Origin: Macrostomum hystrix
Taxonomy: Eukaryota > Animalia > Platyhelminthes
Direction of reading: 5' to 3'
Assembly (NCBI GenBank): GCA_950097015.1
Contig: CATNEN010000010.1
Coordinates: forward strand, 2,852,001 to 2,916,000
Length of the DNA stretch: 64,000 nucleotides
Numbering within the stretch: the first letter of the stretch is position 1; every line of letters begins with the position of its first letter. A model generated the notes under the pieces. It searched no databases and was not told where the DNA came from. It saw only the letters and a list, made by a program, of their open reading frames with translations. Below are positions 42,778-64,000 of this stretch, in pieces. A program made the position numbers and the translations under genes.

Positions 42778-44110
42778 CTTCGTCGGGCTCTTCTTCCTCG
42801 TCCGCCTCTTCGTCATCGTCGCCGTCGACTTCTCCATGAAAGGCACTACGCTGGGCTGCCAGGGTCGTTTTTTTCTTGCGGCGTTCTCGGGTCACCGCCT
42901 GACGGAGGTAAGCAGAAATGGCCGACTCGATGGCGTCATTTTTAGCTTCTTTGTGGCAGCTCCACACAACATCTGAGAAAATGTTGGATGAAAATAACAA
43001 AATAGATTTAAACGAAGAAGCGTATTTATCTTAAAAGGCTGTAGAAAACAACAGAAAAAGACAAGCATTGCCTACAACAAAAATTACTTACTTTTGATGA
43101 ATGGTAACAATCCTGTAGACTCGAAGCTTTGCTTCGATACTCCACTCCGGACAGCTCCGCGCAGACTGAATTTTTGTGCCACAGTGTCGTCCATGAGACG
43201 ATAGAGAATGTTGGATACGGACTTCGGTACTTGTTTACCACAAAGCCGTCGAAAAAACTGAAACTGAAAGAAGCAAATTAGTAAACATGGTTAAATTAAT
43301 GGATGTATGACATTATACTACGCAGTTTGTTGCTGTTGCAATTTTAAATTTTAGGGGAATTAAAAAATGAATTCTGCAAAGTTACAGTTCTGAATATTTT
43401 ATCTGTAATCGAATATGCAAAATCCACCGTATTGCCATTGAATTACCCATAGTCACCTTTTTGTATGTACTGCTGCCTTTAAAAGATTCTAAATGACAAC
43501 CCATTCTTTGGTACTCACAGCGTCATTAGAACAGTTTCGATCACTCGTCAAACGCTTAGCCCAATCTTTCAGAGAGTCGACCGAACTGCCAGTAAATGGT
43601 AAATCCTGAAGGATGGGTCTGTCAGTAGGCTGTCGAACAGCAGAACTGGCTCCGACACCACGAGAAGAGCTCGAGTTTTGTAGAGTTAAGACCAGCAGGT
43701 GGAGATCGCTCAGTTTTGAGGATAGGACGCCGATGGAACTATGCATCGAGCGTTGGACGTCTGAAAGTAATTCAACGAACGTACTTGGGCGCCAGGCAAG
43801 AACACACATCTAGAGGCTTAAATCGATTGCGATTAAATCGATCAAGAAAATAAAATAAATGCCACAATTATTAAACCCTTAAAGAAAATTCCCCTTTTCC
43901 AGATGTAAACATGCATATTGCGGTACAATGTTACTTTGGCACTAGCTTCTAATATGAAGCCGTTTTAAACTTACTTTCAAGGCGTGTCAAAGTTGTGACG
44001 ATCGTCTCTAATGTGTCCTTAAAATCTGCGTCGGAATGGCGCACCGAAGAGGACCGGGCGGTTGCAGAATGCTGCTCCAACGGAAAAGCTGCCGCAGAGG
44101 CGGCGGCGGC

Positions 44111-44460
44111 AGGAGCGAAGCTGCGTGCCAATGGGCTCTGGCTGCTGCATTGAAGCGACGGAGAAGCTGCGGTGGCAACGGGAGCGAAGCTGCGTGCCAA
44201 TGGGCTCTGGCTGCTGCATTGAAGCGACGGAGAAGCTGCGGTGGCAACGGGAGCGAAGCTGCGTGCCAATGGGCTCTGGCTGCTGCATTGAAGCGACGGA
44301 GAAGCTGCGGTGGCAACGGGAGCGAAGCTGCGTGCCAATGGGCTCTGGCTGCTGCATTGAAGCGACGGAGAAGCTGCGGTGGCAACGGGAGCGAAGCTGC
44401 GTGCCAATGGGCTCTGGCTGCTGCATTGAAGCGACGGAGAATCTGCGGCTGCGGGAGCAA
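44111..44460. repeat. 69-bp tandem repeat, about 5 copies, encoding a 23-aa S/P/A-rich unit
   Basis: Unit GGAGCGAAGCTGCGTGCCAATGGGCTCTGGCTGCTGCATTGAAGCGACGGAGAAGCTGCGGTGGCAACG. Confidence 0.95.
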
Positions 44461-45889
44461 AGTTTTGCCTCGACTGGAGACAATTAGGATTAGGAGACAA
44501 TGCCGATGCTGAATTACTTGTGCTGATAATCGACAGAGGCTGAAATTGCTGCTGCTGAACTTGAAACCTAGGCGGTGCTGTAGATGAATTCTTTGCAACA
44601 TTGCTTTTTTGGCTTCGTAGTAGCTTTGTTTCGAACCCTTGGTTGCGAATCATAACTTTCTTGGTGAAAATGCATGACATCTCGACGCCTTCGAGGATTT
44701 TCAGTATCCGTGGAATCGACATCTCCCCAATCTTCATATCGCTTGCTCGCAGTGGCAGCAGAGTGATAGTTCTCTGAATAGAAGGAATTAAAGCGGCAAA
44801 TTGAATCTTAAATAGTTTTGAAAAGAACATTGACATTTTAAATTTCTTTTGCCTGAAAACACAATTAAGCAATTTTCTCAGAGTTCAACTACGTCTGAAT
44901 GATTGTATGCAGAATTTTTTTGCACAAAAATTGAGCAGTTTAGCTCACCTTTGGATGTAAGAATACAGACTTCATATGCTGACCAACTGTCGTCGGGTGG
45001 TGACTTTTCCGGATTCGCAATGCAACTTTTGAATTTCTTGACTGGGGGAAACAAAGCAGTAGTCTCGCTCTGCATCCATGAGCGGTGAATTACTTCAACT
45101 TCATTGGTTTCAACAAAGCGAACTACAACAAAAACAAAGCGAACTACAACAAAAGGGCTCATGTCCATGCTTTCAATTCTCAATGAGGTCTGCTGAAAAG
45201 ATAATGATTGAAGCTTTGTCTTAACAATATTGTGTATAGAAATATGATACTTAATGTAATATAATGAGCATAAATATTATAAATGAGTAACTAAATAATG
45301 CACTATTTCTTCCATTCTTAAATTCAGTAATGTTACATTTAAGCAGTGATGGGCACCGCTAAATTTATTTTTAGCGCGGCTAAATAGCGCTGTCGCTAAC
45401 TAGTTAAAGGAAAGATTTTATAAACAGTCACTAAAATCAATTATTGGTGCATTTTTGCAAAAACAAAACAATTGTGTGTAAATTGAATCAATTGAAATTT
45501 GTTATACACTTATAGTCATAATAGACAGTTAATAAAACAAAGGCGTATATGGTGTAACCATGATATTTTTATTGCACTAAATAAAAAAAAAATACATATA
45601 CATGAATATGATGATGATACTATGATAGAATGAAGACAATTGAAGCCGAAGATTTAAAGCACCAATTATTGATTTCATTGACAATTGCACTTTACAAGTT
45701 ACAAAAAAATTTGTGGGATGCACAAACACTTGCATGGAATAATAGTCAAGGTTTAATGATCAACCAGGGTATGCAAAATTGGGAGAATACACTTGCGGCT
45801 TCTTAGGCTAAGGAGCATTGCCTTACCAAAGAAGTCTACCCAGTGCACAGCAGTGAGTGAGCCACTTAGTTTTCCAACTTAAAAGATAT

Positions 45890-48185
45890 TTAAAGACATT
45901 GAATTAATTGTTTCATTATATAGGGCTGTTTGAGTAGTAAACCTGCGTCCAAAAAAACACATCCAACATCAGTAGACAGGATATAGGACACAGAAATAGC
46001 AAGACCCTCACGGGTTAAAATATAACAATCTGGACTATCAATGGAAATAAAAGTGTCCCGTAAAAGAATATTAACTTTTCTGTACACACCAAAAACTTGA
46101 ACTCCATGTGGCAGAAATTCTATATCTGATGATGCAATTGGGTATGAAAACTCGAATGGTGACTGAGCAGAAGCTAAATATTTAGGAAAAAACCGAGAGT
46201 TACATCTCTCTCAGAAATTATTTTTACTGTTTGCTCAAGTGCAAAACGAGGACTTCGACAAAACTGAGTGATGAAGCGTATAAAATTTTCACCCCAAAAG
46301 CAACTAAAACTGTCTAATGCACCCCGACGCTGCACTTCAGAAGGAATATGAATGATTGAATGTATGGTATACACAATAAACTTGTCACCCCAAATTAGCT
46401 TACACTCTTTAACAATGTGAGCAGCCAAAGTTTCAGCATATGCACAGAATGATTGACACTCTATAGGGGGTGGCAAAATGAAAACAAAAGAATGCAATGA
46501 TAAAAATAAGTTATACAAAGAATCGGGGATATTTCCTACAAGAACAAAAGGTGCTAGATACAAAATGAACAACCTTAACTCTGTTGCCTTCTAAAGACCT
46601 AAGCACTCCATTGATCGAGGCTTACGAGCAAAGTCATGTGGAATACAGTCTATAATAGAAACCATAATAGAAACCATATAGAAACCAAGTCCATTACTGA
46701 TTTGACGAATTTGAGGTCCAGAAGCCCGATGTGGCAACTGGCCTTTGCTAAGATTTTTAAGACATTTAAGGACAATACCTTCATAGATTAGGTGCATAGG
46801 GTCTAAAGGAAAATCATTCACCATGTCAACAGGTAGACGAAAGAATGGGCTCTGTTGCAGAACATGATTGGGATACTCATCAGATCTAAAACCAAAATCT
46901 GTTCGCAATGTAGCATCTAGATCAGCAAATGTTACCCTTCCATCACAATATTCCCCTTCAAATATACATTTATCACACCCAAAATAGCCCCAACATGCCT
47001 TTGTGCCTTTAACAAAACTACGTGCTGGTGAATCACAGGTTATCATAGAGATTCTAAATGGGAAAATTAAATCCAATTCAGATGCAACACTAGTAACATA
47101 GCCATTGGTAATTAAATCATGCAACTCATTAATACAGTCAGATAAGAAATCGGTTGCAGATTGAGGCTTGCCTGTTCCATAATATAAGCCAACAATAAAG
47201 ACAGAGTGAGGCAAATTTGAAATTCTAGCCAATATAGGCCACATTGTGTGCGTTGTGCTATGGTGGACCTTAGCTCCATCAATAAAGAGATGCAACTCTA
47301 AAGTCTGGCAAGAATGGGCAATAGAATGGCTAAATAAAAAGTCAAGTCCAGCTTTTACTCCAAAATGATAGTAATGTCCTGGATATACAGAACGAAATTG
47401 GAGCTTCCTAGGTGTTTTCAATAGTGATCGGTAGTCAGAAGCAAGACCTGGAAACTCTTCTTGCAAACTATTAAGCAGATGATTCACACATGTTGTTTCT
47501 GTTCCAGTTGCATTAGCCCAGTCACGAAGCAAATTTTCTAGCCTTGCACATTGGTCGTCAACATTGTCATCTTCAGACCCAGAAGAAGAATTAATTTCAG
47601 AAATAGTTGAGACTCCTAAATGCCCAAAAAGCAAGATGCAAATTACAAAAAATGGATTGAACTTGCCTAGTTTGTTTTTTTCTAAAGTCTTGTGTATATA
47701 CAGGGCCTAATATACTTAGTATTTAGTCTTCAAGTTACTTTCATTACATTACCGACACAACTAAAAAACTTGTAAAATGCAAAAATGTTAAGAACAAGCT
47801 ATAAAAGCAAAACTATGAGAAACTTACCATTATTCAATGAATTATCATCAGGAAGCTTACACATTTCTTCTAGTTCCAACTGAGATACATTATTAGACTC
47901 CATTGCACATGGGATCTCAGGCATTTCAGCTTCTAAATAGTTTTGACTACTAGCACTTCCTGAAGCAGCTTCTTGATAGCTTCTTTTCAAATGCCGTTGA
48001 ATAGTTCGTTTGCTTTTGCTTTTCTTATATTCATTACTATCAATGACTACAAAACTGCCGACTGCAACAGGCTCCTTAGGAACAGATTCTGACTGATCTG
48101 CAGTGGTGACCATTGAAAAAATCAAATAGGCCATAACGAGCAAAGGAAAAATGCTAGGTGGTACAGCAAGTAACATGGCCAACAT
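45890..48185 (-). pseudogene. CACTA/EnSpm-like transposase of element B (stop + frameshift)
   Basis: FIDGAKV..MWPIL; CDSPARSFVKGTK; DPMHLIYEG; L*KATE (TAG at a Trp position); FSCFWGENF. Upstream exon 47799-48185 ends at a GTAAG donor, as in element A. Confidence 0.85.
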
Positions 48186-50583: not shown

Positions 50584-52989
50584 TGTAACACTTTCTCTCA
50601 GCAGTACGGTATTTCAAATTAGCGGGAGGGAAATCAGTTCACTTTCGGACACTACACTCGACTCACACGCTGTCGCTCCGATAAACGTTATACCACTCGA
50701 TGCTCGCAGTGTAATTCAGTTTAAAAAATTATTATTGTTACAATTTAAAACAAATGTATTGCGAATCCTCGAATATTGCGAAACTATTGATAGCGCGAAC
50801 TTTAAAATGTAAAAGGACTGTTAAAAACATAATGATACATCAGAACCGAGCTCATGTGAAAGCGGCAAACCTCAAAGTACTACACATATTTAAAAGTAGC
50901 AGGAGCATCATACTACATTACCCTCCCCTTCCAAAAAATCAATGTCCTCATTGATATAAAATAACGATAGGACGAGCTACAGGCTGGGAGATCGATGTGG
51001 AGTATTAGAGGAGATTAAAAACATTGGAATGACAACTGTGAATTATTTTTGAACGGCGAACATTACACAAAGATAAACTATTATCTGCAACTACGAGTGC
51101 ATGTACATGTAACACTGGCATAAGGAATCTGCCACCAAAGCACAACTGCACCATTACTGAGATAGGCAGGGCTGAGCGCAAAAAAACTCTCGCAGATAAA
51201 CACGCGCACTATACGTGCATCCAGTAGTATAGTAGAACTGACACTGAACTGCAACGCATTCGCGACAAGACACCACAAAGACTTCAACACAGCCACTGAA
51301 CTGCATGACCGTCAAAAGTGAAAAATCGATACAATGATTGATGACATGCTCGAGATTCACTTCTGGTCGCAAGGGGACGAAGACGCAGCAAAACAAAATA
51401 TATAGACACTTAACAATACTGTAGGAAAAATATTGGTAATCATCTACATCTACATGTACATGTACACTATATAAAGAGAGAAATAAAACTGGTCCGACAG
51501 GCAATGCGATCAGTAATTAAGGGGCGGGCAACGCAGAGCTCGGTGATCAGCGGACACATGTGATCAAGCCGCCGCCCCGGTCATGTAGGCTTCGTGCCTG
51601 CGCCGCGCAGCAACGGCTTTCGGTCCACGGCTGCTCCCAGAAGCCGCAGCTGCCTCTTCCATCGGGGACACAGCCGCTGAGCCAAGCAGCAGGGCGCAGC
51701 CGTCCATGGGCTCGAGCTCGATGCCGCTGACGACCATGGGGCGCCGCTGATGCCAGGGCGGACTGCATGCGCCGCCGCCTCCGATGCCGATGCCATCGAC
51801 GGCGCCGATGTGGACTCTGCAGTTCGGGCGGCCGACGGCCTCGGTGGCGATGCGCTGCCATGCGCTTGCCCTGCTCGTCTGCCGGGTCATGACGCTGCTG
51901 TGCGTCGCTGCCTTTCAGGCGACGTTCCTCGCCCTCCGTGATTGCGTGCAACTCCGTTAAGGCAACCCGCAGGCGCAGCTTTGCCTCCATCTAGACTCTG
52001 GTCGCCTCTGCAGTCAGGGCCTCGGCTGAACAACGCCGCGCCTTGATCTCTTGCGTCGCCGCCTCCAACTTGCGCTGCTCGTCTGCCAGGAGTTTCCGCT
52101 GCTCGGCCAGGCGCTGTTGCTCCTCAGCATGGCACACCTTCTGTTCGGTGAGGTGCTGTAATTCCTCAGCTTGGTTCCACATGGCTTCCTCGAATTGACG
52201 CCGGAAATCCTGTGCTTGGCGATGCAGAGCCTCCTCGGCCTGACGACGCAGCTGCTCCTATGCCTGGCAACGCAGCTGCTCCTCGGCCTGGCGACGCAGC
52301 TGCTCCTCTGCCTGGCGTCTCAGCTGCTCCTCCGCCTGGCAACGCAGCTGCTCCTCCGCCTGGCGTCTTAGCTGCTCCACGGCCTGGCGCTGCAGTGCTT
52401 GGCGGTCTTTCTCTTCCTCTAGCTGTTGCTCTAGGTCGTCTATTTTATTCAGTTGGAGCTCCAGCCAAGAAACTGACTTTAGCAGTCCCGCCGGCAGTTT
52501 CTGCGGGATCTGCTGACACAGTCCGCTCTCGCGACATCCCTAAATATACCGGGCCATGCAGAACTCCGCCTCTGTAACGTAATTGTCGCCATTTCGATCA
52601 GCTAGCCACCAAAGCTCGCTTCTTTCAGCTGCTGATAGGCTGCTATCGCGGAACCAGATCGCGTAGAATTGAAAGCGGCTGACGAGTCCGTAAAGCAACT
52701 TTGGTGTACCGTGAAACTGATGGCGATAGTCATCCAAAAGATCAGCGGGGATCTGCCAGTTTCTCCACACGGTAACCGTCATCGCGACCAGAAGATCCTC
52801 GATCGTCGTCCTGGCGTGGTCGCCAAATGTACAACACTTTCTCTCAGCAGTACGGTATTTCAAATTAGCGGGAGGGAAATCAGTTCACTTTCGGACACTA
52901 CACTCGACTCACACGCTGTCGCTCCGATAAACGTTATACCGCTCGATGCTCGCAGTGTAATTCAGTTTTAAAAATTATTATTGGTTACA
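50584..52989 (-). mobile_element. Non-autonomous LTR element (about 160-bp LTRs) carrying an EH-domain ORF
   Basis: Near-identical direct repeats 50584-50742 and 52828-52989 with TGT..ACA ends; PBS TGGCGACCACGCCAGGAC (52808-52825, tRNA-Arg-like). No PPT or TSD seen; no gag/pol motifs. Confidence 0.8.
51547..52782 (-). pseudogene. EH (Eps15-homology) domain + coiled-coil ORF with three in-frame TAG stops
   Basis: WQIPADLLDDYRHQF..SSLSAAERSELWWLADRNGDNYVTEAEFCMARYI*..QIPQKLPAGLL aligns by eye to the EH consensus; followed by (RRQAEEQL)n from a 24-bp repeat. ORFs 52540-52863, 51991-52182 and 51547-51990 share one frame. Confidence 0.7.
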
Positions 52990-53422
52990 CCGTCACACCC
53001 GCCTCCCTCCCCAAAAGGCGGTAGGTGAGCGCAAAAAGATCGAAAGCATTAAATTACGATAAATAGCTAGTATAAATGTCTCTTAGAGTCGAACAACGTG
53101 AAAGGGTGTTTAAAAACCGAAGCAAACTAAATTTTTCTTCGCAAGCAACCTACTACGAGTAATAATGCTGGAAATGACAATCGAAATACGAATATTCTTG
53201 GTCACAAAATTGGCACGAAAAATATTTGACTGATTTAGGAAATTAAAATGCACTGGCGGAAACACGATATGAGAAAAATATTGTATTTGAGATATTCGTT
53301 AGAAGAACTGTTATAGTATTGATTATAGTCCAAGTTATCATATAAAAAATTCCTGACTAGATCGCTGTACGGTGTGGTGCTCTACAAGTCATTTACGGAG
53401 TTCGAGGCAACGTCACGGTCGC

Positions 53423-53760
53423 GCCTGTGGTGGCCCTGGAACGCCTGTTGTGGCCTTGATCGCCTGTCGTGGCCCTGGAACGCCTGTTGTGGCCTTGATC
53501 GCCTGTGCTGGCCCTGGAACGCCTGTTGTGGCCTTGATCGCCTGTGGTGGCCCTGGAACGCCTGTTGTGGTCTTGATCGCCTGTGGTGGCCCTGGAACGC
53601 CTGTTGTGGTCTTGATCGCCTGTGGTGGCTCTGGAACGCCTGTTGTGGCCTTGATCGCCTGTGGTGGCCCTGAAACGCCTGTTGTGGTCTTGATCGCCTG
53701 TGGTGGCTCTGGAACGCCTGTTGTGGCCTTGATCGCCTGTGACGGCCCTGGAACGCCTGT
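53423..53760. repeat. 39-bp tandem repeat (8-9 copies) in the Ty3-3 3' region
   Basis: Unit GTGGTGGCCCTGGAACGCCTGTTGTGGCCTTGATCGCCT. Confidence 0.95.
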
Positions 53761-54245
53761 TGTGCTGCAGCCACCGACGTCTTGGCAGCTGGCGGTGACT
53801 GGCCTGCCCGCCCCTTTACTAACTAACTGAGCCACCCGCCCGAGAAGAGAAGGAAAGGAGAGAGAAGAAAAACCGGCGACCTAAACTCACGAGACTGCGA
53901 AAATGATGCCAGGAACCAGAGAAATGAACGGAGAGTGCTTGCTGCACCGTCAACCCTACAGCCCGAAGCGCAGGCATCCACTGAACAGTAAGTGCGGCAA
54001 GCGGACGGACTAACAGCAACCTGGTATCCGATACCAAGAAAAAATATAATGTCAAATTTTAGTTTCTTTAACTTGCTTTTTTATTTTTTTTTCAGGAAAA
54101 CGTATTTCCTTTTTTTGACGTTTTTTTCACATTTTTCATTTAAAAAGAGTTCCCTAGTTTTATACAGTAAGAACTTGGGACGTAGGCGGCGAAATCTTTG
54201 CTACATGTACGAGCTAACTTCCTAGGTGCACGTAGGCACGGTTAT

Positions 54246-57200
54246 CTAACGTCTAGTACAAAATCGCACCACTCTGCTTAGAAAACGTTGAGGCTTGCGC
54301 ACCTGACGACCGGAACGGGTCGTCATGACCGGAGAAAGTGTGGAACCAGCACTTGCCGGTTCACTTGGTGCCACTAAGTCCTCAGCTTGTTGACCTGCGC
54401 CGGAACTTTCCACGGCGTCTTCATTTAATGACGCCCCAGGCCTGGTGTCACTGTTATCACCTAAGCCTTTCGAGCTTATACTTTCGTTTACTGCTGCAAT
54501 GGTACTGTTGGAGTGAATCACCTGGGGTTCAAACCCCTGTTCAGCTAGGATTTGCACCTCCGCTCCCACCTCAGGTACTTCATCCGGCCGCATCACTACA
54601 AGAGAAGTTTCCAAGGCTTCTGGCGGCGAATCCGGAGGCAAGGTGCGTCGTGAGTCAGGCGAAGTCACACGCGGTGGGTCAGTCGGCAAGATGTGCTGTG
54701 GTTCAGGCGACGATGCGCGCCGTGGCTCAGGCGGCTCGGTGCGTGCTGACACAACCGACACCGCAGCGTAAGATGGACATCGGACTTCGTCCTCTGAGGA
54801 GTACGAAATTTCACTGGCGCGTTTTTCGCATGGGTGATACTCTTCTGACTCGCTGGTCGTTCCTGGACTAGGGTCAGCTCGACCCACTGACTGATCATCT
54901 AACAGGCCCAACCGCGATGGTGGGATCATGGCTGGAACCCTCAGTCCAAATCTGTCCACAACGTCCTGATACGTCTGTTTACGAATGCAGCGCTTAATGC
55001 GGTCTACATTGTAAATGTTGTGATTCGGATTCGGGGCTTGACAAAGTGGGTTAACCCGAGCGAACTCGGGTATGAGGCGGTAGTTTCGCTCGGAAATCTT
55101 TTGAACCACCTTGTACGGCCCCAGCCACACAGCCGTGTCCAATCCTCGATGGTCAGGATTCAGAACCCAGACAAGTTCGCCGATTTCGAAGTTAGAATGA
55201 ATGGCGTTGGGGTCATAATTCCGTTTTTGCCTTTGCTGGGCTTTGCCTCGCACCTGACGAGCAATTGCAGGCACCTCCACCAAGAGTTTGTGAAGCCTGT
55301 GGGCGTAGGAGTCTGGATTATACCGGTCTTGTCTTGGAGTGTTGAACTTTAGATCCAGTTGCAGGGTGAGCTCGCGGCCAAAGAAGAGCCTGGCTGGAGT
55401 CCATCCTGTTGATTCGGCCGTGGTGCTTCTGATAGAGAGGCCTACTAGCTGGGCTGCAAACGGCCAGTTTATTCTTTTTTCAAGGCAAACAGCGCGGATC
55501 TGGGCTTTGATCGTCTGCACTGTTCGCTCCGCTTTGCCGTTTGCCTGTGGTCTGCGCGCGGTGATTCGCGATAGGTCTACTTCTAGTAGACGGGCGAGTT
55601 CGGCAATGGTCTTGTTTACAAACGCTGTTCCATTATCTGAAATCAAGCTCTCCATGGCACCATAGCGGACAACCCACTCAGTTAGAATGGCTGTAGCCGT
55701 TGTTTCGGCAGACACGTCAGAGACAGGTATGATCTCCACAAATCCTGAAAAATTGTCGACTAAGATTAGCAGGTACCGACTGCCGTCTAGTTCAGGGAAT
55801 GGACCGGCGTGGTCTGCATGTACGATTTGATTCGGGTATCCTGATTGGATTGGTTTCAGAGGTTCTTTATTCAAGCGTTTGCTTTTCTTCGTCCGACTAC
55901 AGATCTCGCACTCCGCTATTACACCTTTGACAAACACTTCCAGGTTTGTGATTTGAAACCTCTGCTTCAATGCTCGGACTGTTTTACCAGTTCCACAGTG
56001 GTTGATTTCCCTGTGATAGCAGGACACTAGCTCGTCGATATCCGCAGTTTCAGGTATAATGATGAGACGTTTGGCTATTTGACCTTGCTTGGCGGGCTTG
56101 ACGCGAATCAACAGACCGTCCACAACCTCAAGCTCGTCAAACATGGCCCACAACGTTCGGATTTCACGACTACAGTCCTGAACTTCCTCTTTCTTTAGCT
56201 TCGGAGAGTTCCCTGCAACAGCTTCGATGAGCCTGACTAGGTCCGTGCTAGACTCTTGTGCATCTCTGGCCCAAATGTTCTCAGCTTCCTGAGTCATCTC
56301 ATCTTCGTCTGAGTCTTCTTCCAATTGTTCTACTTGACCTGCCCGAGACGCGTGTTGGCCTTGATTGACTCCGATCTCACCTGACATCTGAGATATGGGA
56401 GCAAGCGCAAACTGATTTTCTGACACCTCATTGGGTTGGTAAGATAGTACGGTTGCAGATGATGGTAATGTGCATGTACTGTCCTGTTGTAAAGGGATGT
56501 GTGATGTTCGACTAATTACATTTGGTTGCTCCGTTTGCGTTTCTGTTGTCATCATTTCTGCGTCGGCTTCATGTCTATCTCTGGCCGTCACTTCAGTTTT
56601 AGTGACTACAGAGTCGCTACCTGACTGAGGTTGTGTCTTGCAGAGTTCTGGTGGTGGTTCTGTTTGACTGGAAGTGTCTGTTCGTGTGGCTCTCAGTTGT
56701 ACTGGTACCTGGACGAACTCTTGATCCTTCTGGTTTTCTTGTCCTTCTAAGCTTCTAAACTTCTCATTGAAAGCTTCGATCTGGCTACATGTAGGACAGT
56801 CGTGATGGTCAGCCCTAAATCTTGGATTACGACTGAGCACATCTGCGTTGACATGCTTGACTCCTGCACGATGCTCAACAGAGAAGTCATTTTCAGCCAG
56901 CCGCTCTAGGGGTGTTTGACTCACGCTGAAGTCATACACCTCGATCGTAGCTAGCCATTGTGCTAGCATACCTGTGGAATGCTTCTTAGTGTGTAGCCAT
57001 TGTAGGGCGGCTGCGTCTGAGCGCACAAGAAACTTGCGGTCCAGCAGATATGTTCGAAAATGTTCCAGCATGATGACAAGTCCAAGTAATTCACGCATCG
57101 TGGCGCAGTAATTCTTCTGCGATTGTGTGAATTTTTTCGAAGCATACGCAACGACGTGCTCCTGACCACCTGGACCTTCTTGTGACAAAACGCCGCCAAC

Positions 57201-60200
57201 TCCTTCAAGCGAGGAGTCGCAATCTAAGATGAAGAGCCCAGCTGACGGACTGAAGTCAGGGTACGCAAGGATTGGAGGCGCGCACAGATTTGCTTTCAGC
57301 TCTTCGAAAGCTTTGTCATGCTGCTCCAGCCAGCAGAATGTCGACGATCCTTTAGCTAGCGCATACAGCGGCGATGCGATCACGGAAAAACGTTGCACGA
57401 ACTTTCTATAGTAGTTCGCGAATCCTAGGAACGCTAATAATTGCTTTTTATCTGATGGTTTGCACCAATTCTTTACCGCGTCGATCTTTGCTGGGTCGGC
57501 TTCAATTCCTTGAGCTGAAACAACGAAGCCTAAGAACCGAACGCGATCCTTGAAAAGCTCACATTTAGCTGGTTTAATTTTTAAGTTTGCCTTTTTAAGT
57601 TGCCAGAGGACAAGCGCCAAGTGGACGATCATTTCGTCATTGTCCCTGGCCTTTATGATTATATCGTCAAGATAGATAAGACTCACGCGCATGAGTAAAG
57701 GCCTGAACACCCTGTGCATCAACTTGGCAAAGTTTGCCGGTGCTGTCTTGATGCCAAAGGGTACGACCTTCCATCGGAAAGTGCCTTGGGGGCATGAGAA
57801 TGCTGTGATGTCTCGATCGCATTCGCGAATACCTACTTGCCAATAAGCTGCGGTGAGATCTAAACTGGAAAATATTTTCGACTCTGCTAGGCTATCAAAC
57901 GATTCTTCTATTAGTGGTAAAGGAAAGGTGCATGGCTTGATTACTTTGTTGACCTGTCGATAGTCAATACACAGGCGTTGGGAACCATCTTTTTTCCGAA
58001 CTAAGACTATTGGAGAGGACCACTCAGAGTCGCACTCTTCAATGATTCCTTGATTGACTAACTGGCTTATATGTTTGTCTAAAAATTCCTTCTGCGAGGG
58101 GGTCGTGCGCCTAGATGGCTGCCAGATAGGGCGGCAAGCCGACTCCTGCAGCTCAATTGTCATCTCATGTACATGTGTTTTTCCTAGGTCTGTTTCGCTA
58201 AGCGATATCTGACTACTAAAATAGTTCAGCAGCTTAAGTGTTACTGTCAGCTGGTTCTTCGATAGGGTGGTCTCATTGAGCTTAAACTGTGTAGTCAGCC
58301 AAGATGCTATTCCTGGGTCTGGGTCAGGGAGTTTTGCAAGCTTGGCTCCAAGATCTTCAGAGCTGCTGATGGAGAAATCTTTCTCAGATACAGGCGTGAC
58401 AGAAATTGAATCCCCATGTTCAAGGCTCCTAAAAGAGGCGATTTCCTGCCCCATGGAGATCGATGATGGCTGGTCACTACTGTTTAATAGGCGCACGAGT
58501 ACATGGTTAGTGGTGCTTACACTGTCAACAGAGTGTGCTACGAACAGCTCTGAGTCCCGGCAGAAGAGTTTAGTGCCTAGAACACCCTGAGTACCAGGAT
58601 CAGCACCTGAGACCCGGCTTGGCACCATAGTCTCTGACCTGGGGAGTAGCTGCACGTTGCAGGCGGCTGTGACTCTGCGTGCCTGGAAAACTCCCTTGTC
58701 ACCTTCAATGACTGGTACAGGCTCTCCAGCTACAGTTACCTGACCATCAGCAACAAGCAAGTTAACGCTAAAGCTTCTCATAAAGTCTATTCCTAACAGC
58801 AAATCTGAAACCTGACCTACCGTTACCAGGAAAACGTGGGTCTGCTTCTTCTTTCCAAGTTTGACCTCACAGTGAAGCGTGCCCAAAATCTGTGACGAGG
58901 TTCCATTGAATGCTGTCGCGGCTTGGTATTGTCTAGCAGGGACAAATTTGTGATTTATGGGATCATTTGCGATCAGCTGGTCCTTGATTTTAGTTCCAAC
59001 GACACTAGCATTGCAACCTGAATCAAGGCAAGCGATGTACTTATCGTTACCTATTTCTAACTGCACGAACATGCTGGACTCGACTCTAGCCTCGTTAGTC
59101 AGCGTTTGATCACAACGGACAGGGAATGGATAGCGGCAGACTCCTATCGCCTTATCTCGGTTGTGAGCTGGGTCCGTTTGACGCCAGAACTGTACGATTG
59201 TGCCTACCAGTTGGCGCCGATTGGCTAACTGTTGTAGCTCATTGTCTAAGCTGGATTGATGAAAGAAGATGGAGCCTGGTATTTGGCTTGGTTGGATGAA
59301 GCCAAATCCAGTCTTCAAAGCCGTGATGGTACCTGTCTCCATCACCTGACTCTGAGAAACGATGGTGTTTGGTCTTCCACCACCTGTCCCGCCGAAGGGC
59401 AATGGCTGTGGGCAGTCCGCGGTACGATGATCACCAGCACCGCATCGGTTGCAGGACCTGCGCATCTTGCGAGATTGGTGACTTTTTTGGGTCCTATAAC
59501 TATCCATTTTGTGTGTCTGTGGTCCTTGGTCACTGGTAGAGTTAAGATTTGCATGCCCTTTTAATTGGGACTCTGTCTGGAAGGCTGGCGAAGAAGCCTG
59601 ATTTTGCTGAAGCAGTTTCTCTAGTTCACGAACACGGGCTTCCAGCTCTGCTGTTCTGTCAGGAGCTGCTGTCCTTACAACAAGAGGGACAGTTTCACCG
59701 GACAGGAGCTTCTTGACGCCTGCTATTTCCCTAGCCTTCTTTGCAAGATCTTCAGCTGTCCATGATGGGTTCTCTTGCCCAAGAAGTATCAGCCTTTCTG
59801 CAAGGGCCTTGTCTCGCAGCCCATAGCAGAACCTTGCTCGGACTAGAGGTTCAGCATCACATTTTTTCCTGTTCGCTGTTTTCGACAGCCTTATCAACCT
59901 GTCAAAGAACTCTTGTGTGGATTCCAGATTTGTCTGAGTCGCGGCAGCTAGTTCTAAAAAGCTCTTATGTTCAGTTCCTGAGTCTGTGAATCGCTCTTTA
60001 AGCCTCATCAGAGCTGTCTGAATGGATTCATGGTGCAATGAGTTGTTGAATATGAATTCTTGGCACTCAGGTGCCAGCATGGACAGCAGGACTGCTGGTT
60101 GTTGTGGGGTTGGCACGTGGTGTGCATCAACATACGTTAGGAACTGTGTTTCCCAAAGCTCGAAATTCATTTCTGGTTGGAATGGTGGTGGTGGTCGCAG

Positions 60201-60446
60201 TTTAGGGCTTGAATTAGGGATTTTCTCAGCTGCTGTTGATGCTTCTCTGTCACACGTTTTTTCTAGTATCATAGTCAGAGTCTGGAGCACTTTTTGCAGT
60301 TCTAACTGGCCTACATTTACTTCAGGTGGCTTCACATCATTGTTCCCTCCTGGTGGAGCTGACTGAGTTTGGTTGTCTCCTGCCTGTAGGTTCACTTGAG
60401 CTCCAGCACCATCAGGCGGCAGTGCCTCGTCACCCTCTCCGATCAT
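54246..60446 (-). CDS. Gag-Pol polyprotein, 2066 aa: Gag, CCHC, cold-shock-like domain, protease, RT, RNase H, integrase
   Basis: CNRCGAGDHRTADC; LDSGC; IYLDDIII; LDCDSS..GGVLSQ; H..INH..C..C; ADHAGP, SDNGTAF, GKAER; GPY; terminal TRSGRQVRKPQRF. Confidence 0.95.
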   Translation of the reverse strand: MIGEGDEALPPDGAGAQVNLQAGDNQTQSAPPGGNNDVKPPEVNVGQLELQKVLQTLTMILEKTCDREASTAAEKIPNSSPKLRPPPPFQPEMNFELWETQFLTYVDAHHVPTPQQPAVLLSMLAPECQEFIFNNSLHHESIQTALMRLKERFTDSGTEHKSFLELAAATQTNLESTQEFFDRLIRLSKTANRKKCDAEPLVRARFCYGLRDKALAERLILLGQENPSWTAEDLAKKAREIAGVKKLLSGETVPLVVRTAAPDRTAELEARVRELEKLLQQNQASSPAFQTESQLKGHANLNSTSDQGPQTHKMDSYRTQKSHQSRKMRRSCNRCGAGDHRTADCPQPLPFGGTGGGRPNTIVSQSQVMETGTITALKTGFGFIQPSQIPGSIFFHQSSLDNELQQLANRRQLVGTIVQFWRQTDPAHNRDKAIGVCRYPFPVRCDQTLTNEARVESSMFVQLEIGNDKYIACLDSGCNASVVGTKIKDQLIANDPINHKFVPARQYQAATAFNGTSSQILGTLHCEVKLGKKKQTHVFLVTVGQVSDLLLGIDFMRSFSVNLLVADGQVTVAGEPVPVIEGDKGVFQARRVTAACNVQLLPRSETMVPSRVSGADPGTQGVLGTKLFCRDSELFVAHSVDSVSTTNHVLVRLLNSSDQPSSISMGQEIASFRSLEHGDSISVTPVSEKDFSISSSEDLGAKLAKLPDPDPGIASWLTTQFKLNETTLSKNQLTVTLKLLNYFSSQISLSETDLGKTHVHEMTIELQESACRPIWQPSRRTTPSQKEFLDKHISQLVNQGIIEECDSEWSSPIVLVRKKDGSQRLCIDYRQVNKVIKPCTFPLPLIEESFDSLAESKIFSSLDLTAAYWQVGIRECDRDITAFSCPQGTFRWKVVPFGIKTAPANFAKLMHRVFRPLLMRVSLIYLDDIIIKARDNDEMIVHLALVLWQLKKANLKIKPAKCELFKDRVRFLGFVVSAQGIEADPAKIDAVKNWCKPSDKKQLLAFLGFANYYRKFVQRFSVIASPLYALAKGSSTFCWLEQHDKAFEELKANLCAPPILAYPDFSPSAGLFILDCDSSLEGVGGVLSQEGPGGQEHVVAYASKKFTQSQKNYCATMRELLGLVIMLEHFRTYLLDRKFLVRSDAAALQWLHTKKHSTGMLAQWLATIEVYDFSVSQTPLERLAENDFSVEHRAGVKHVNADVLSRNPRFRADHHDCPTCSQIEAFNEKFRSLEGQENQKDQEFVQVPVQLRATRTDTSSQTEPPPELCKTQPQSGSDSVVTKTEVTARDRHEADAEMMTTETQTEQPNVISRTSHIPLQQDSTCTLPSSATVLSYQPNEVSENQFALAPISQMSGEIGVNQGQHASRAGQVEQLEEDSDEDEMTQEAENIWARDAQESSTDLVRLIEAVAGNSPKLKKEEVQDCSREIRTLWAMFDELEVVDGLLIRVKPAKQGQIAKRLIIIPETADIDELVSCYHREINHCGTGKTVRALKQRFQITNLEVFVKGVIAECEICSRTKKSKRLNKEPLKPIQSGYPNQIVHADHAGPFPELDGSRYLLILVDNFSGFVEIIPVSDVSAETTATAILTEWVVRYGAMESLISDNGTAFVNKTIAELARLLEVDLSRITARRPQANGKAERTVQTIKAQIRAVCLEKRINWPFAAQLVGLSIRSTTAESTGWTPARLFFGRELTLQLDLKFNTPRQDRYNPDSYAHRLHKLLVEVPAIARQVRGKAQQRQKRNYDPNAIHSNFEIGELVWVLNPDHRGLDTAVWLGPYKVVQKISERNYRLIPEFARVNPLCQAPNPNHNIYNVDRIKRCIRKQTYQDVVDRFGLRVPAMIPPSRLGLLDDQSVGRADPSPGTTSESEEYHPCEKRASEISYSSEDEVRCPSYAAVSVVSARTEPPEPRRASSPEPQHILPTDPPRVTSPDSRRTLPPDSPPEALETSLVVMRPDEVPEVGAEVQILAEQGFEPQVIHSNSTIAAVNESISSKGLGDNSDTRPGASLNEDAVESSGAGQQAEDLVAPSEPASAGSTLSPVMTTRSGRQVRKPQRFLSRVVRFCTRR

Positions 60447-61018
60447 TTAGAGAAGCGGAATGAGAATAGGAAAAGAGGAGATGGAAGGTTAAAGGTGAAG
60501 GCAGACACAGAATTGTCTGGCAGAGAAAGAGGCCCCTACTCAAATTCTTGGAAACGCTGGCGAACGACCAAAATTTTATGTGCTAAACTCTGCCAGACGG
60601 GCCCTATACAAAAAATTATTTCTAAGCCTAAAAACGAGACAGCCTCACCAAGCCAGTACTGCCAGTGCCGCGGCGTGTTGAGCTCGTGGGGGTGTTGTCG
60701 CTCTGGCTGAGGACGTACAATTAACGTTGGACTTGCGGTCGGACACTGGTTAGGTCGTCTCTGATTGGTTGGCAGGTAATCAGCCAATTAGGTTGCTCCG
60801 ACTTCTAACTTCTAGCTTCTAGTATTCCAAACTAGGCAGTCACAGCTAGGCAAACAGGCAACTATGACGGTGCATATGCCCTTTAATTCGGCACTTGCTG
60901 TTGGTCAGGGTTAGACGCCGATGTTGATGTGTAGTCAGTAGCAGTGTAGAAGTGTAGTAGTGTAGCGGTAGCGGTAGCAATTTTGTTCTTGTCTTCGAGG
61001 TGGGACCCTCCAAATTTA

Positions 61019-61330
61019 TGTGACGAATAAAGGTTAGTGTAGCGGTAATATCGTCGAATTATATTTGATATAAATGTGTATATATATTTCCAAAGTAATC
61101 TCGATGCTCACACGCTCGACACAAGGCAGGGTAGAGCAGAAAAATATACATACGTTGCTTTTTAAAAAGGACAGCTAATTCTTAGAATGATACAATATAA
61201 CAATAATTAGTAAAAATGCTTAGCATATAAATAATAATCTTGTCAGCAACTTGTAATGTAGCGAATTACTATAAAATAAATAAGCAATTAAACTACCAAT
61301 TAAACTACAATTAAAGGTTACACCGTCACA
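61019..61330 (-). repeat. 5' LTR of Ty3/gypsy-3 (312 bp)
   Basis: 7-bp terminal inverted repeats TGTGACG/CGTCACA with adjacent PBS. Confidence 0.85.
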
Positions 61331-62175
61331 ATTGCCTATGCTCTTAGTGGGGTGCCTATTACAGGAGTTAGGTTGGGTGAAATATGCTAAATGGTTGGGT
61401 GAAAAAAATTGGCATTTCATTCTCATGCCTATACTGCATCTACTCTATATCTATTCGGTATTCATATTCAGTATTCATTATAATATTCATTAGTTGGATT
61501 TGGAAAATCTTGGATTCATTTCATCTATAATATATATAAAAGTGAAAACTCTGTCTGTGTGTGTGTGTGTCTGTCTGTGTGTGTGCAACCTTTTGTCTTT
61601 ATAGACGCCGAAACCGCTCAACCAAATCGCACCAAACTTTGCACATACCTAAAACCACCTACGCTGAGTGCAATAGGCTACTCAAATTCCCGAAAAATCA
61701 TTTCCTTCCTGCTCAAAAGTGCAAAAAACTGCTCAAAAATCGTCAAAAAATCACTCAATTCGACATATCGTCGCCCCACTTTGTCAGATTTTCTCCAAAT
61801 TTGATCCACTTACACTTTACATGTTTTCCAACAATGCTGTCAATTTTGAACATCTCTACTCAATCCAGAGCAAAGCTGCATCATCTCAAAGTGAGTCACT
61901 TTTTGTTTTCCGAGGACAGCCACCCCAACTCCCCTCCGCCACTCTGCGGGCCAAATTTTATTACAGCCACCCCCTCCCTTCCCCGGGCGCCGAAGCCCCA
62001 GACTGTACATTGAATTTCAAGCCGTGAATGTACACAGCCCAAACCCCTAGACTGTCTACTGGCCCCCAAGCAGCACTGAGACTGAGTGCGGTGAGTGCGG
62101 TGGCGTCCCAGTGCGCAGGGCTCTCCGGTCGATATTTCTCTCCAGCCAGCCTGGGATAGAAGAAAGAGAGAGGCT

Positions 62176-62796
62176 GGCGTTGACTGGCTGTCAGAGAGGG
62201 CAATTCTGTGTCCTAGAAATGATGCCGCCAACGAAATTAACTACCAACTGCTTCAGGAGTTGCCAGGTGCAGTTTTCACCTACAAGTCAATTGATACAAC
62301 GTTGACTGATGACACCGCTGTGGAGTATCCTGTTGAGTTTCTGAACTCTCTAGATCCTCCTGGAACTCCATCGCACAACTTGCAGCTGAAAGTTGGGGCA
62401 CCAATTATGCTCCTCCGCAACCTGAATGTGCCAAGGCTGTGTAACGGCACCAGACTGATAGTCAGGCGGCTCTTCCCACACGTGATTGAGGCCACGATAA
62501 TGACTGGATCTGGCAGAGGAGAGTCTGTGTTCGTTCCCCGGATTCCAATTATCCCCACGGACCTGCCATTTCAGTTCAAGCGACTGCAGTTCCCTGTGAG
62601 AGTGTGCTTTGCGATGACTATTAACAAGGCTCAGGGACAGTCGCTGAAGGTGGCTGGCATCAACCTGGAGACTCCTTGCTTCTCGCATGGGCAGCTTTAT
62701 GTCGCCTGCTCCCGTGTTGGAACTCCAGCTGGCCTATTCATTTTCGCACCAAGGGGAAGAACGAAGAATGTGGTGTATGCCCAGGCCTTGAAGTGA
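62176..62796 (+). pseudogene. C-terminal fragment of Helitron Pif1-like helicase
   Basis: RAILCPRN, LKVGAPIMLLRNL..LCNGTRL, KRLQFPVRVCFAMTINKAQGQSL, FSHGQLYVACSRV; the N-terminal Rep and helicase core are absent. Confidence 0.9.
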
Positions 62797-62948
62797 CTCG
62801 CAAGCAATTAATAGAAAAGTAGTCACGAATTGACCTTGACCTGTCTAACTCTGAACTCTGAAACAGTTAAATTTTGTTTCTTTGACATTGTTATTGTTAT
62901 GTCATGGCTATTTTCCTTATGTCTACGCGTGTACATGCATACTGTATA

Positions 62949-63206
62949 CAGAGGCAGATTTAGGGGGGGGCGGGGGGGCAGTCGCCCCCCTAAATTTTAA
63001 TCATGGGAATAAGATGCCCCCACCATGCACCCCCCACCTTTTCGGCCGCTGGCGCCCCTTTTTCAGCCGCTGGCTCCCGTTTTTCAGCCGCTGGCGCCCT
63101 TTCTTGGCTCCTGGCGCCCTTTTTCGGCCGCTGGCACCCCCTCTGTGATTCTCATGGCGCTCCCCTGACAGACCGCCCCAAAACAAAATTCCTGGATCTG
63201 CCACTG
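62949..63206. mobile_element. hAT-type MITE nested in Helitron copy 2
   Basis: Same TIRs and same ACTGTATA TSD (62941-62948, 63207-63214) as in copy 1. Confidence 0.85.
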
Positions 63207-64000
63207 ACTGTATAGAGGAGTGGCTAAGAGACATGTTTCTAAAGAAGTAATCAAGAGGGGGCTGTTTGGACAAACTTTTCACTTATTTTTTACTTAAAAC
63301 GCCCTTAAACAAACTCTTCACTTTTCATTAATGCAGTAAATAAATAAATGGTGACCTTCACTATAAAGTTAATACAGAGACGTGAATTGCTTACTGCTTT
63401 GCTTTAAATTTCTGCCCCCAAAAAACAACGGGCCAAAAAAGCTAGTTTCATCTATAAATAATAATGCTTACAATTCATGCATACCGATATCTGATACTAA
63501 TATGTGCTATGGGCATGGGCCTTGATACCTAATACACAAGTGTCAAGTGACAACACTGTCTATTTTAATTAACTTAAACTTTTTAGCTAATTTCTTTTTG
63601 CTTGGTGTACTAGACAGTTTTTATCAAAGTAGACCTAAGAGTAGCACACAATTGCCAATATTTAATTGACTTTATAAACAAAACTTTAAGGTAGAAAATT
63701 TATTAAGGTAATGTATCATCAACCAAACAAGAATGTGTATTTTTTAACTTCAAACCTAAGCTAGGCCTACAGATTTTCTATTTAAGATAGGCCTATGATA
63801 AACCAAAAGCCAAGTTATAGAAAACAGTTACATCTTTCTAAAAAGTATCTGCTTTTGCTATTTTGTCAAATAGAAAAAGTTATTCCTGCTTTTTATCTAA
63901 AACTGTACAATAATTTTCAATTTTCATGTATCTTCAAACCAAACAGAGAATTTGATGTTTGGTTTTACAATTTGACTGAGTGGTTTAATCTTATCTTAAG

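What the first reader, a model, noticed from the sequence alone, without database searches (positions are those of the whole stretch)
59139..59453. Cold-shock domain inserted in an intact Ty3 Gag-Pol between the CCHC knuckle and the protease
Seen: directly after CNRCGAGDHRTADC the open 2066-aa ORF reads METGTITALKTGFGFIQPSQIPGSIFFHQSSLDNELQQLANRRQLVGTIVQFWRQTDPAHNRDKAIGV. Known: this fits the CSD RNP1/RNP2 pattern (GFGFI..IFFH) and looks most like the CSDs of animal UNR/CSDE1. CSD plus CCHC is the RNA-chaperone combination of Lin28 and plant cold-shock proteins. I do not know of a CSD as a standard Ty3 module. Inference: a captured host RNA-binding domain extends nucleocapsid function (packaging, tRNA annealing, translational control, or shielding RNA from silencing).
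Basis: partly seen in the sequence, partly recalled or inferred. Interest (0 to 1): 0.9.

Follow-up and report, generated by a model that had tools for sequence, protein, structure and literature searches.

The report
Cold-shock domain inside a flatworm retrotransposon
A jumping gene of the Ty3/gypsy type, whose only close relatives are in the flatworm Macrostomum lignano, carries a real and conserved cold-shock RNA-binding domain between its nucleocapsid zinc knuckle and its protease, an arrangement I could not find described for any retroelement.

Summary
The minus-strand ORF 60446-54246 is an uninterrupted 2066-aa Ty3/gypsy Gag-Pol. After its single CCHC knuckle (aa 332-345) and a glycine-rich linker comes a 68-aa cold-shock domain (aa 369-436, window 59342-59139).

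- **Domain identity:** the isolated segment passes Pfam CSD (31.8 bits, cut-off 27). AlphaFold2 gives a confident five-stranded barrel. Foldseek and PDB sequence searches put UNR/CSDE1 cold-shock domains first.
- **Conservation:** the same CCHC-CSD-protease layout occurs in three Macrostomum lignano families. Each has an intact ORF and LTRs 99.8-100% identical.
- **Selection:** the domain is indel-free, about as conserved as the Gag core, and under purifying selection (pN/pS 0.23, p = 8e-12). Its flanking linkers drift.
- **Distribution:** the four retroelement CSDs form one group. No cellular donor is identifiable. None of 117 more distant relatives has the domain.
- **This copy:** the window copy has lost all but 15 nt of its 3' LTR.

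The most likely role is an extra single-stranded-RNA binding and chaperone module working with the nucleocapsid, like Lin28 or plant cold-shock proteins. That role is inferred, not shown. I rate it a new variant of a known kind: accessory-domain capture by an LTR retrotransposon.

The parts
61019..61330 (-). 5' LTR, 312 bp, TGTGAC...GTCACA
   Evidence: The end is set by a 28-nt identity to the LTR-end/PBS junction of the M. lignano relative L001. The start is set by a 15-nt identity to the sequence right after the polypurine tract, and by the same TGTGAC start in the relatives' LTRs.
60999..61012 (-). Primer-binding site TGGAGGGTCCCACC, 6 nt after the LTR
   Evidence: The same motif (differing by at most a 1-nt indel or substitution) sits at the same place in all three M. 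lignano families. No tRNA gene lies in the window to name the primer.
54246..60446 (-). Single uninterrupted Gag-Pol ORF, 2066 aa plus stop
   Evidence: Pfam finds PR, RVT_1, RNase H, Integrase_H2C2 and rve, in Ty3/gypsy order.
59700..60197 (-). Gag capsid-like helical domain (aa 84-249)
   Evidence: The AlphaFold2 model has pLDDT about 85-90 here. Foldseek matches the PNMA2 capsid (8rb3 E = 3.9e-4, 8uyo). Family C gives a Pfam PNMA hit.
59412..59453 (-). The only CCHC zinc knuckle, CNRCGAGDHRTADC (aa 332-345)
   Evidence: A motif scan finds one CX2CX4HX4C in the ORF. The Cys and His residues are invariant in all families.
59343..59411 (-). Glycine/proline-rich linker (aa 346-368), predicted disordered
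   Evidence: pLDDT is 28-61. The linker is poorly conserved and has indels: pN 0.35 against family A, 9% invariant columns.
59139..59342 (-). Cold-shock domain (aa 369-436). RNP1 is KTGFGFI (F381, F383). RNP2 is IFFH (F394, H396).
   Evidence: Pfam CSD 31.8 bits. AlphaFold2 and Foldseek agree. Purifying selection and no indels.
59073..59138 (-). Short CSD-to-protease linker (aa 437-458)
   Evidence: pLDDT is low after aa 440. Conservation is moderate: 18% invariant columns.
58764..59072 (-). Aspartic protease (aa 459-561), active-site DSG at aa 475-477 (window 59016-59024)
   Evidence: Pfam Asp_protease families and motif position.
55548..58001 (-). RT (aa 816-975), RNase H (1039-1171), integrase zinc and core domains (1470-1633)
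   Evidence: Pfam.
53344..53811 (-). 39-bp tandem array in the 3' untranslated region
   Evidence: The relative L001 has arrays at the same place.
52998..53012 (-). Polypurine tract GGGGAGGGAGGCGGG
   Evidence: It ends in the same GGCGG(G/A) as in the relatives.
52983..52997 (-). Remnant of the 3' LTR: only its first 15 nt, then unrelated repeat sequence
   Evidence: The rest of the LTR is found nowhere in the window.

Best explanation
SHOWN: This is a Ty3/gypsy LTR retrotransposon of a clade known so far only from Macrostomum flatworms. Its one-ORF Gag-Pol has a single canonical cold-shock domain. The domain is a five-stranded OB barrel with intact RNP1 and RNP2 aromatic residues. It is inserted as a roughly 90-aa block (flexible linker plus domain) between the single nucleocapsid CCHC knuckle and the protease. 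The block has been kept under purifying selection through divergence that saturated synonymous sites. It is present in families that look recently active.

INFERRED: The domain is a second single-stranded nucleic-acid binding surface of the nucleocapsid region. Tethered to the zinc knuckle by a disordered glycine-rich linker, it would bind and melt the element's RNA. That would help the jobs normally done by nucleocapsid basic regions and knuckles: selecting and packaging genomic RNA, annealing the primer tRNA to the PBS, and the strand transfers of reverse transcription. This is the same two-module logic (CSD plus CCHC) used by Lin28 and by plant cold-shock/glycine-rich proteins. Whether the domain stays attached to the nucleocapsid after protease cleavage is not known.
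For: - **Domain identity:** Pfam; AlphaFold2; Foldseek; PDB sequence and profile searches with UNR/CSDE1 domains on top.
- **Position:** the CSD lies downstream of a PNMA2/Ty3-type capsid fold and the only CCHC, and upstream of the protease.
- **Same layout elsewhere:** three M. lignano families share it. They have intact ORFs of 2043, 1764 and 1921 aa, LTRs 99.8-100% identical, a shared PBS, and 4-bp target duplications in three of the four copies read.
- **Selection:** window against family A gives CSD pN 0.16, pS 0.71, pN/pS 0.23, Fisher p = 8e-12. Flanking linkers have pN 0.35-0.63.
- **Conservation pattern:** no indels in the CSD, 32% invariant columns (Gag core 29%). G-F-I-Q, F394, H396 and GT.V.F.R..D are invariant in the alignments of the retroelement copies.
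- **Linkers:** predicted disordered on both sides.
- **Inserted block:** the CCHC-to-RT distance is 468-476 aa in the four CSD families, against a median of 380 aa in 15 CSD-less relatives.
- **One origin:** the retroelement CSDs form one group (support 94/96, 96% of bootstrap trees).
Against: - No binding, chaperone or cleavage data exist, so the functional part rests on analogy.
- The order is CCHC then CSD with one knuckle, the reverse of Lin28 and plant CSPs, so cooperative RNA recognition need not be the same.
- The nearest solved relatives (UNR/CSDE1) are translation and mRNA-stability regulators rather than packaging proteins, which fits a trans-acting role equally well.
- The CSD evolves faster than PR, RT or IN.
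- Synonymous sites are saturated, so dN/dS values are only rough.
- This window copy lacks most of its 3' LTR, so its own activity is doubtful.
Confidence: 0.55

Rival explanations
1. The CSD is cut out by the element's protease as a free small protein. It then acts in trans like UNR/CSDE1 or Y-box proteins: it binds the element's long leader (about 550 nt between PBS and ATG) or host mRNAs to promote translation or stabilise the RNA. It would not be part of the nucleocapsid.
For: UNR/CSDE1 domains are the closest solved relatives. Disordered linkers flank the domain on both sides, leaving room for cleavage sites. The leader is long.
Against: A one-ORF polyprotein would make the CSD in equal amounts with the capsid, which suits a structural role better. 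No cleavage sites are known. UNR works with five to nine CSDs, and here there is one (one search shows the contrast).
Confidence: 0.2
2. The domain is a counter-defence device. It coats or remodels the element's RNA so that host small-RNA silencing or RNA decay cannot reach it, or it acts as a decoy for a host CSD-protein partner.
For: There is only indirect support: the domain is kept in families that look recently active in a genome dense with transposons.
Against: Nothing in the sequence points specifically to silencing. No rapid, positive-selection-like evolution is seen, as an arms race would predict (pN/pS 0.23).
Confidence: 0.08
3. The domain is a temperature adaptation. It melts cold-stabilised RNA structure so that packaging and reverse transcription still work at the low and variable temperatures of a free-living intertidal worm.
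For: Bacterial and plant CSD proteins are RNA chaperones induced by cold (general knowledge). M. lignano LTR retrotransposons are known to couple their transcription to temperature through heat-shock elements (PMC12801592).
Against: That paper reports heat rather than cold activation and does not mention this domain. No temperature data exist for these families. This is a special case of the main explanation rather than a separate mechanism.
Confidence: 0.1
4. It is not a functional part. It could be a chance resemblance, a gene-model or assembly chimera with a host CSD gene, or a decaying passenger sequence.
For: In the whole polyprotein the Pfam score is just under the cut-off (25.8 against 27).
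Against: The domain is read from raw DNA in one open frame in the window and in four M. lignano loci flanked by LTRs. It passes Pfam in isolation in all four families. The fold is confident. It shows purifying selection and no indels.
Confidence: 0.02

Closest known systems
UNR/CSDE1 cold-shock domains (human CSD1 1wfq, Drosophila CSD1 4qqb)
   Same: They are the best matches among solved structures, by sequence (1wfq, E = 1.7e-6), by family profile (the top five hits are all UNR/CSDE1) and by fold (TM 0.80, rmsd 1.7 A). They share the (Y/F)GFIQ and (L/I)FFH motifs.
   Different: UNR/CSDE1 are cellular proteins with five to nine tandem CSDs and no knuckle, capsid or enzymes. Here a single CSD sits in a retroelement polyprotein. 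Identity is only about 30%, and no orthology or donor relationship could be shown.
Lin28 (CSD followed by two CCHC knuckles)
   Same: One polypeptide combines a cold-shock domain and a retroviral-type CCHC knuckle joined by a flexible linker. Together they recognise single-stranded RNA (general knowledge). The Lin28B CSD is a fold match (3ulj, 4a4i).
   Different: The order is reversed (knuckle first) and there is one knuckle, not two. The Lin28 CSD ranks well below UNR, CspA and Y-box domains in similarity. There is no evidence of microRNA-precursor binding.
Plant cold-shock / glycine-rich proteins (AtGRP2/AtCSP type: CSD, glycine-rich stretches, CCHC knuckles)
   Same: They combine a CSD, a glycine-rich linker and a CCHC knuckle, and are RNA chaperones (general knowledge). 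The AtGRP2 CSD 8tg0 is among the best fold and profile hits.
   Different: They are cellular proteins with the CSD at the N-terminus and several knuckles. No common descent is implied.
Ty3/gypsy (Metaviridae) Gag-Pol with a one-knuckle nucleocapsid
   Same: The backbone matches: capsid fold, one CCHC, PR-RT-RNase H-IN order, TG..CA LTRs, PBS, polypurine tract, and 4-bp target duplications in relatives.
   Different: A roughly 90-aa linker-plus-CSD block lies between the knuckle and the protease. It is absent from 117 more distant relatives.
Other accessory domains captured by retroelements: dUTPase between nucleocapsid and protease in betaretroviruses, chromodomain after the integrase in chromoviruses, DNA methyltransferases in some retrotransposons (PMC5890265)
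   Same: The principle is the same: a cellular-type domain fixed inside the polyprotein of one clade. The betaretroviral dUTPase occupies the same slot, nucleocapsid to protease (general knowledge).
   Different: The captured domain is different, an RNA-binding OB fold rather than an enzyme or chromatin reader. The host range is different.

Membership tests
Cold-shock domain (Pfam PF00313, OB fold) | Sequence match to the family profile at or above the curated cut-off | tested here: met
   The isolated segment scores 31.4-31.8 bits against a cut-off of 27, E = 1.3e-7. All four retroelement families match at E <= 0.01. In the whole 2066-aa protein the score is 25.8, just below the cut-off.
Cold-shock domain (Pfam PF00313, OB fold) | Five-stranded antiparallel beta-barrel | tested here: met
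   The AlphaFold2 model has five strands with pLDDT above 90. The top 41 Foldseek PDB hits are all cold-shock proteins or domains, with TM up to 0.81.
Cold-shock domain (Pfam PF00313, OB fold) | RNP1 and RNP2 motifs with surface aromatic residues and histidine | tested here: met
   The motifs are KTGFGFI and IFFH. G382, F383, F394 and H396 are invariant, and position 381 is F or Y in all four families.
Cold-shock domain (Pfam PF00313, OB fold) | Binds single-stranded RNA or DNA | not testable with these tools
   This needs binding assays with the purified domain.
Ty3/gypsy LTR retrotransposon (Metaviridae) | Pol domain order PR-RT-RNase H-IN | tested here: met
   Pfam coordinates: 459-561, 816-975, 1039-1171, 1470-1633.
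Ty3/gypsy LTR retrotransposon (Metaviridae) | Gag with a capsid fold and a CCHC nucleocapsid | tested here: met
   PNMA2 capsid fold match. One CX2CX4HX4C motif.
Ty3/gypsy LTR retrotransposon (Metaviridae) | Two LTRs (TG..CA), PBS, polypurine tract, target-site duplication | tested here: inconclusive
   In the window the 5' LTR, PBS and polypurine tract are present, but the 3' LTR is cut after 15 nt, so no duplication can be read. The M. lignano copies show both LTRs (452-827 bp), and L001, L002 and L004 show 4-bp duplications.
Lin28 family | N-terminal CSD followed by two CCHC knuckles | tested here: not met
   There is one knuckle and it precedes the CSD. The resemblance is functional only.
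UNR/CSDE1 family | Five or more tandem CSDs in a cellular protein | tested here: not met
   A single CSD stretch is found in the polyprotein. Cellular hits have 2-8 stretches.

The most novel reading that the evidence does not exclude
The knuckle-plus-CSD pair is a retrotransposon-encoded, Lin28-like sequence-specific RNA reader rather than a general chaperone. It would pick out a particular RNA hairpin: the element's own packaging signal, its primer tRNA, or a host regulatory RNA such as a let-7-type precursor. In that way it would tie the element's replication to, or interfere with, the stem-cell or germline state of a regenerating flatworm.
Probability: 0.06. Interest if true: 0.85.

Novelty: new variant of a known kind. 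Interest (0 to 1): 0.6.

Why it matters
Nucleocapsid proteins of retroviruses and LTR retrotransposons are the textbook nucleic-acid chaperones. They are normally built only from basic stretches and zinc knuckles.

Here evolution has added a different, well-understood RNA-binding fold next to the knuckle and kept it in several families that look recently active. This independently reproduces the CSD-plus-knuckle pairing of Lin28 and of plant cold-shock proteins.

It gives a natural system for asking what a second RNA-binding module adds to packaging, primer annealing or translation. M. lignano also has working transgenesis (PMC5730564). The finding adds a new entry to the short list of cellular domains captured by retroelements, in the same nucleocapsid-to-protease slot that betaretroviruses use for dUTPase.

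For genome annotation, it warns that 'CSD-containing proteins' in flatworm gene sets may be transposon polyproteins.

Tried and rejected
- **Giant 62-kb LTR element.** A long direct repeat (572-1632 against 61530-63446) and the run of minus-strand ORFs suggested this. I rejected it. The repeat carries a Pif1-helicase fragment, and the ORFs belong to unrelated transposons: mariner, LINE and other Ty3-like pols.
- **Second LTR in the window.** Searches with word sizes down to 7 found only a 15-nt remnant.
- **Naming the host.** Exact look-ups of six window ORFs found nothing. The nearest proteins are all M. lignano, at 76% identity, so the source is probably a Macrostomum relative or an unannotated family. 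This is not proven.
- **Naming the CSD donor.**
  - The phmmer ranking is led by multi-CSD proteins of dinoflagellates, fish CSDE1 and unnamed metagenomic proteins.
  - Per-domain scores show no cellular domain above 28 bits.
  - The tree is unresolved at that node.
- **Wider distribution.**
  - The region search found only M. lignano.
  - The RT-anchored search (with a local profile scan) found the domain only in M. lignano families.
  - The fragment search with the family profile found only an unrelated 235-aa knuckle protein.
  - A scan of the 150 best CSD hits for Gag or Pol found only M. lignano.
- **Locating the protease in distant relatives.** phmmer failed for most of them, so I replaced it with the RT-anchored distance.
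- **Literature.** Seven searches found no description of a CSD in a retroelement. The 2025 M. lignano LTR-retrotransposon paper does not mention it in its main text, and its supplements are not held. The 2020 classification note it cites (Letters to Vavilov Journal) is not in the library and could not be checked.
- **Smad MH1 similarity.** A weak match of aa 391-448 (E = 0.016) was set aside as probable chance.
Full report
**1. What is in the window**

On the minus strand, 60446-54246 is one open frame of 2066 codons. Pfam finds an aspartic protease (aa 459-561), RT (816-975), RNase H (1039-1171), the integrase zinc domain (1470-1521) and the integrase core (1538-1633). That is the Ty3/gypsy order.

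- The only CX2CX4HX4C knuckle is aa 332-345 (window 59453-59412).
- The proposed cold-shock segment is aa 369-436 (window 59342-59139).

An AlphaFold2 model of aa 40-460 gives four regions:
- a confident helical domain at aa 84-249;
- a disordered stretch;
- the knuckle;
- a disordered glycine-rich linker followed by a compact beta domain.

The helical part matches the PNMA2 capsid, a Ty3-derived Gag fold (8rb3, E = 3.9e-4). So the upstream part really is Gag.

**2. Is the segment a cold-shock domain?**

Yes.
- **Pfam:** PF00313 scores 25.8 bits in the full protein, a little under the cut-off. On the isolated segment it scores 31.8 bits (E = 1.3e-7), covering profile positions 2-61 of 66.
- **Structure:** with a 36-sequence alignment, AlphaFold2 gives mean pLDDT 83.6. 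pLDDT is above 90 across aa 366-440, with five strands plus a short helix.
- **Fold search:** Foldseek against PDB returns cold-shock domains only at the top. The order is Drosophila UNR CSD1 (4qqb_X, TM 0.80, rmsd 1.7 A), human UNR CSD1 (1wfq), then CspA, AtGRP2, CRHSP-24, Y-box proteins and Lin28B.
- **Sequence search:** against PDB, 1wfq is best (E = 1.7e-6). A profile of the four retroelement domains puts five UNR/CSDE1 entries first.
- **Motifs:** RNP1 (KTGFGFI) and RNP2 (IFFH) are present.

**3. Relatives**

The nearest proteins in a 5.8-billion-protein collection are all from Macrostomum lignano. They form three families.

| Family | Cluster | Annotated proteins | Identity to window ORF |
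|---|---|---|---|
| A | P0001 | 10 | 76% over the first 1279 aa; 60% in aa 325-460 |
| B | P0040 | 7 | 69% in PR-RT-RNase H |
| C | P0187, with older model P0096 | 13 | 65% in PR-RT-RNase H |

All three have knuckle, CSD and protease in the same order, and each CSD matches Pfam.

I read four M. lignano copies from raw DNA, two of them from family B.

| Locus | Family | ORF | LTR length | LTR identity | Target duplication |
|---|---|---|---|---|---|
| L001 | A | 2043 aa, open | 452 bp | 100% | CGTG |
| L003 | B | 1764 aa, open | 629 bp | 100% | not read |
| L004 | C | 1921 aa, open | 827 bp | 99.8% | ATAC |
| L002 | B | open only from within Gag (1767 aa) | 649 bp | 99.8% | ATTT |

All share TG..CA LTR ends, the same PBS (differing by at most 1 nt) and similar polypurine tracts. 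These are young and probably active elements.

After the three families, identity in PR-RT-RNase H drops to 33-37% in arachnids, frogs, fish and others. A profile scan finds no CSD in any of those 117 proteins.

Of the 150 best CSD hits among 1.84 billion representatives, only the two M. lignano entries also contain Gag or Pol. A fragment-sized profile search found no further CSD-bearing sequence. BFVD shows only free-standing CSD proteins of giant viruses and phages.

**4. Selection and anatomy of the insertion**

Between the window copy and family A, synonymous sites are saturated (pS 0.71-0.83).

| Region | pN |
|---|---|
| CSD | 0.16 |
| Whole ORF | 0.16 |
| Upstream linker (aa 291-331) | 0.63 |
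| Downstream linker (aa 346-368) | 0.35 |

For the CSD, pN/pS is 0.23, Fisher p = 8e-12.

Across four families:
- The CSD has no indel columns and 32% invariant columns; the Gag core has 29%.
- The two linkers next to the knuckle have 2% and 9% invariant columns and contain indels.

Invariant residues include G382-F383-I384-Q385, F394, H396 and the GT.V.F.R..D strand.

The distance from the knuckle to the start of RT is 468-476 aa in the four CSD families. In 15 CSD-less relatives that carry a knuckle, the median is 380 aa. The excess of about 90 aa equals the linker plus the domain.

In a tree with 32 cellular CSDs, the four retroelement domains form one group (support 94/96). Their sister group is unresolved. 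Per-domain scores are 124, 54 and 41 bits among retroelements, against 28 bits or less for any cellular domain.

One acquisition in the ancestor of this clade is the simplest reading. The donor is unknown.

**5. State of this copy**

- The 5' LTR is 61330-61019.
- The PBS is 61012-60999.
- The leader is about 550 nt.
- After the ORF comes a 3' untranslated region with a 39-bp tandem array (53344-53811), then a polypurine tract (53012-52998).
- Only the first 15 nt of the 3' LTR follow (52997-52983). They are joined to a different repeat that occurs twice nearby (52833-52983 and 50587-50737).
- The rest of the LTR is nowhere in the window.

So the coding capacity is intact, but the copy is structurally incomplete.

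**6. Mechanism**

Shown: a folded, selected CSD lies one flexible linker away from the single nucleocapsid knuckle, upstream of the protease.

Inferred: it serves as a second single-stranded-RNA binding and melting surface for nucleocapsid tasks, namely genome packaging, primer tRNA annealing and strand transfer. This is analogous to the CSD-plus-knuckle pairing of Lin28 and plant cold-shock proteins.

Rivals:
- a free, UNR-like trans-acting factor for translation or RNA stability;
- RNA shielding against silencing;
- a cold-specific chaperone role;
- a non-functional passenger (contradicted by the evidence above).

The choice among the first three depends on protease cleavage mapping and RNA-binding data, which cannot be obtained here.

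**7. Comparison with what is known, and novelty**

It is a member of the CSD fold family and of Ty3/gypsy elements. It is not a member of the Lin28 or UNR/CSDE1 families, because the order and the copy numbers differ.

Capture of cellular domains by retroelements is well known: chromodomain, dUTPase in the same slot, DNA methyltransferase. A CSD is not among the cases I know. Seven full-text searches found no description.

Two caveats apply. Database entries for family C already carry an automatic PF00313 tag. One 2020 classification note on M. lignano elements could not be read.

Verdict: a real, conserved, lineage-restricted new variant of a known kind. Interest is moderate to high.

Noticed in passing
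window 3987-47634 (minus strand): The window is a nest of transposons. Nearly all long ORFs are on the minus strand. They include a mariner transposase (3987-5048), three other Ty3-like pol pieces (8714-10327, 11831-13564, 19347-21272), a LINE with endonuclease and RT (38658-42566), a Transposase_21 ORF (46591-47634) and a SAP-domain ORF (13621-14745).
   Followed up: partly
window 572-1632 and 61530-63446: A direct repeat 96-99.6% identical sits 61 kb apart, with two indels of 420-480 bp. The longer copy carries a Pif1-helicase 2B-domain ORF (62095-62796), so it is Helitron-like. It begins 200 bp outside the element's 5' LTR and at first looked like LTRs of a giant element.
   Followed up: partly
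window 52983-52997; 52833-52983 and 50587-50737: The element's 3' LTR stops after 15 nt. It is joined to a 151-bp sequence that recurs 2246 bp away at 99% identity. This may be the ends of a small inserted element or a rearrangement. The missing LTR part is not in the window.
   Followed up: partly
window 32061-33620, 26380-27047, 44031-44517, 52173-52388, 53344-53811; L001 12475-13370: There are many tandem arrays: 45 bp (about 30 copies, open in several frames), 51 bp, 69 bp, 24 bp and 39 bp. The 39-bp array lies in the element's 3' untranslated region. The M. lignano relative has arrays at the same place, so this may be a family feature.
   Followed up: no
window ORF aa 1200-1440 and aa 1800-2066 (about 56127-56847 and 54249-55049): The polyprotein is unusually long. 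It has a poorly conserved spacer of about 240 aa between RNase H and integrase, and a Ser/Pro/Glu-rich tail after the integrase that is not shared between families (97% gap columns).
   Followed up: no
window 60999-61012; L001 5366-5379; L002, L003 and L004 just after their 5' LTRs: All four families share essentially the same primer-binding site (TGGAGGGTCCCACC, at most a 1-nt indel or substitution) 6 nt after the LTR. The matching tRNA could not be named, and no tRNA gene lies in the window.
   Followed up: partly
window ORF aa 391-448 (about 59103-59276): There is weak sequence similarity to Smad MH1 domains (3qsv, 5mey, E about 0.016), spanning the end of the CSD and the CRYPFPVRCD linker. 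It is probably chance.
   Followed up: no
L001 6001-12132, L003 5001-10295: The GenBank gene models of the M. lignano relatives splice out short 'introns' from what is one continuous ORF (2011 against 2043 aa; 1760 against 1764 aa). They are annotated as hypothetical proteins or reverse transcriptases rather than as transposon polyproteins.
   Followed up: partly
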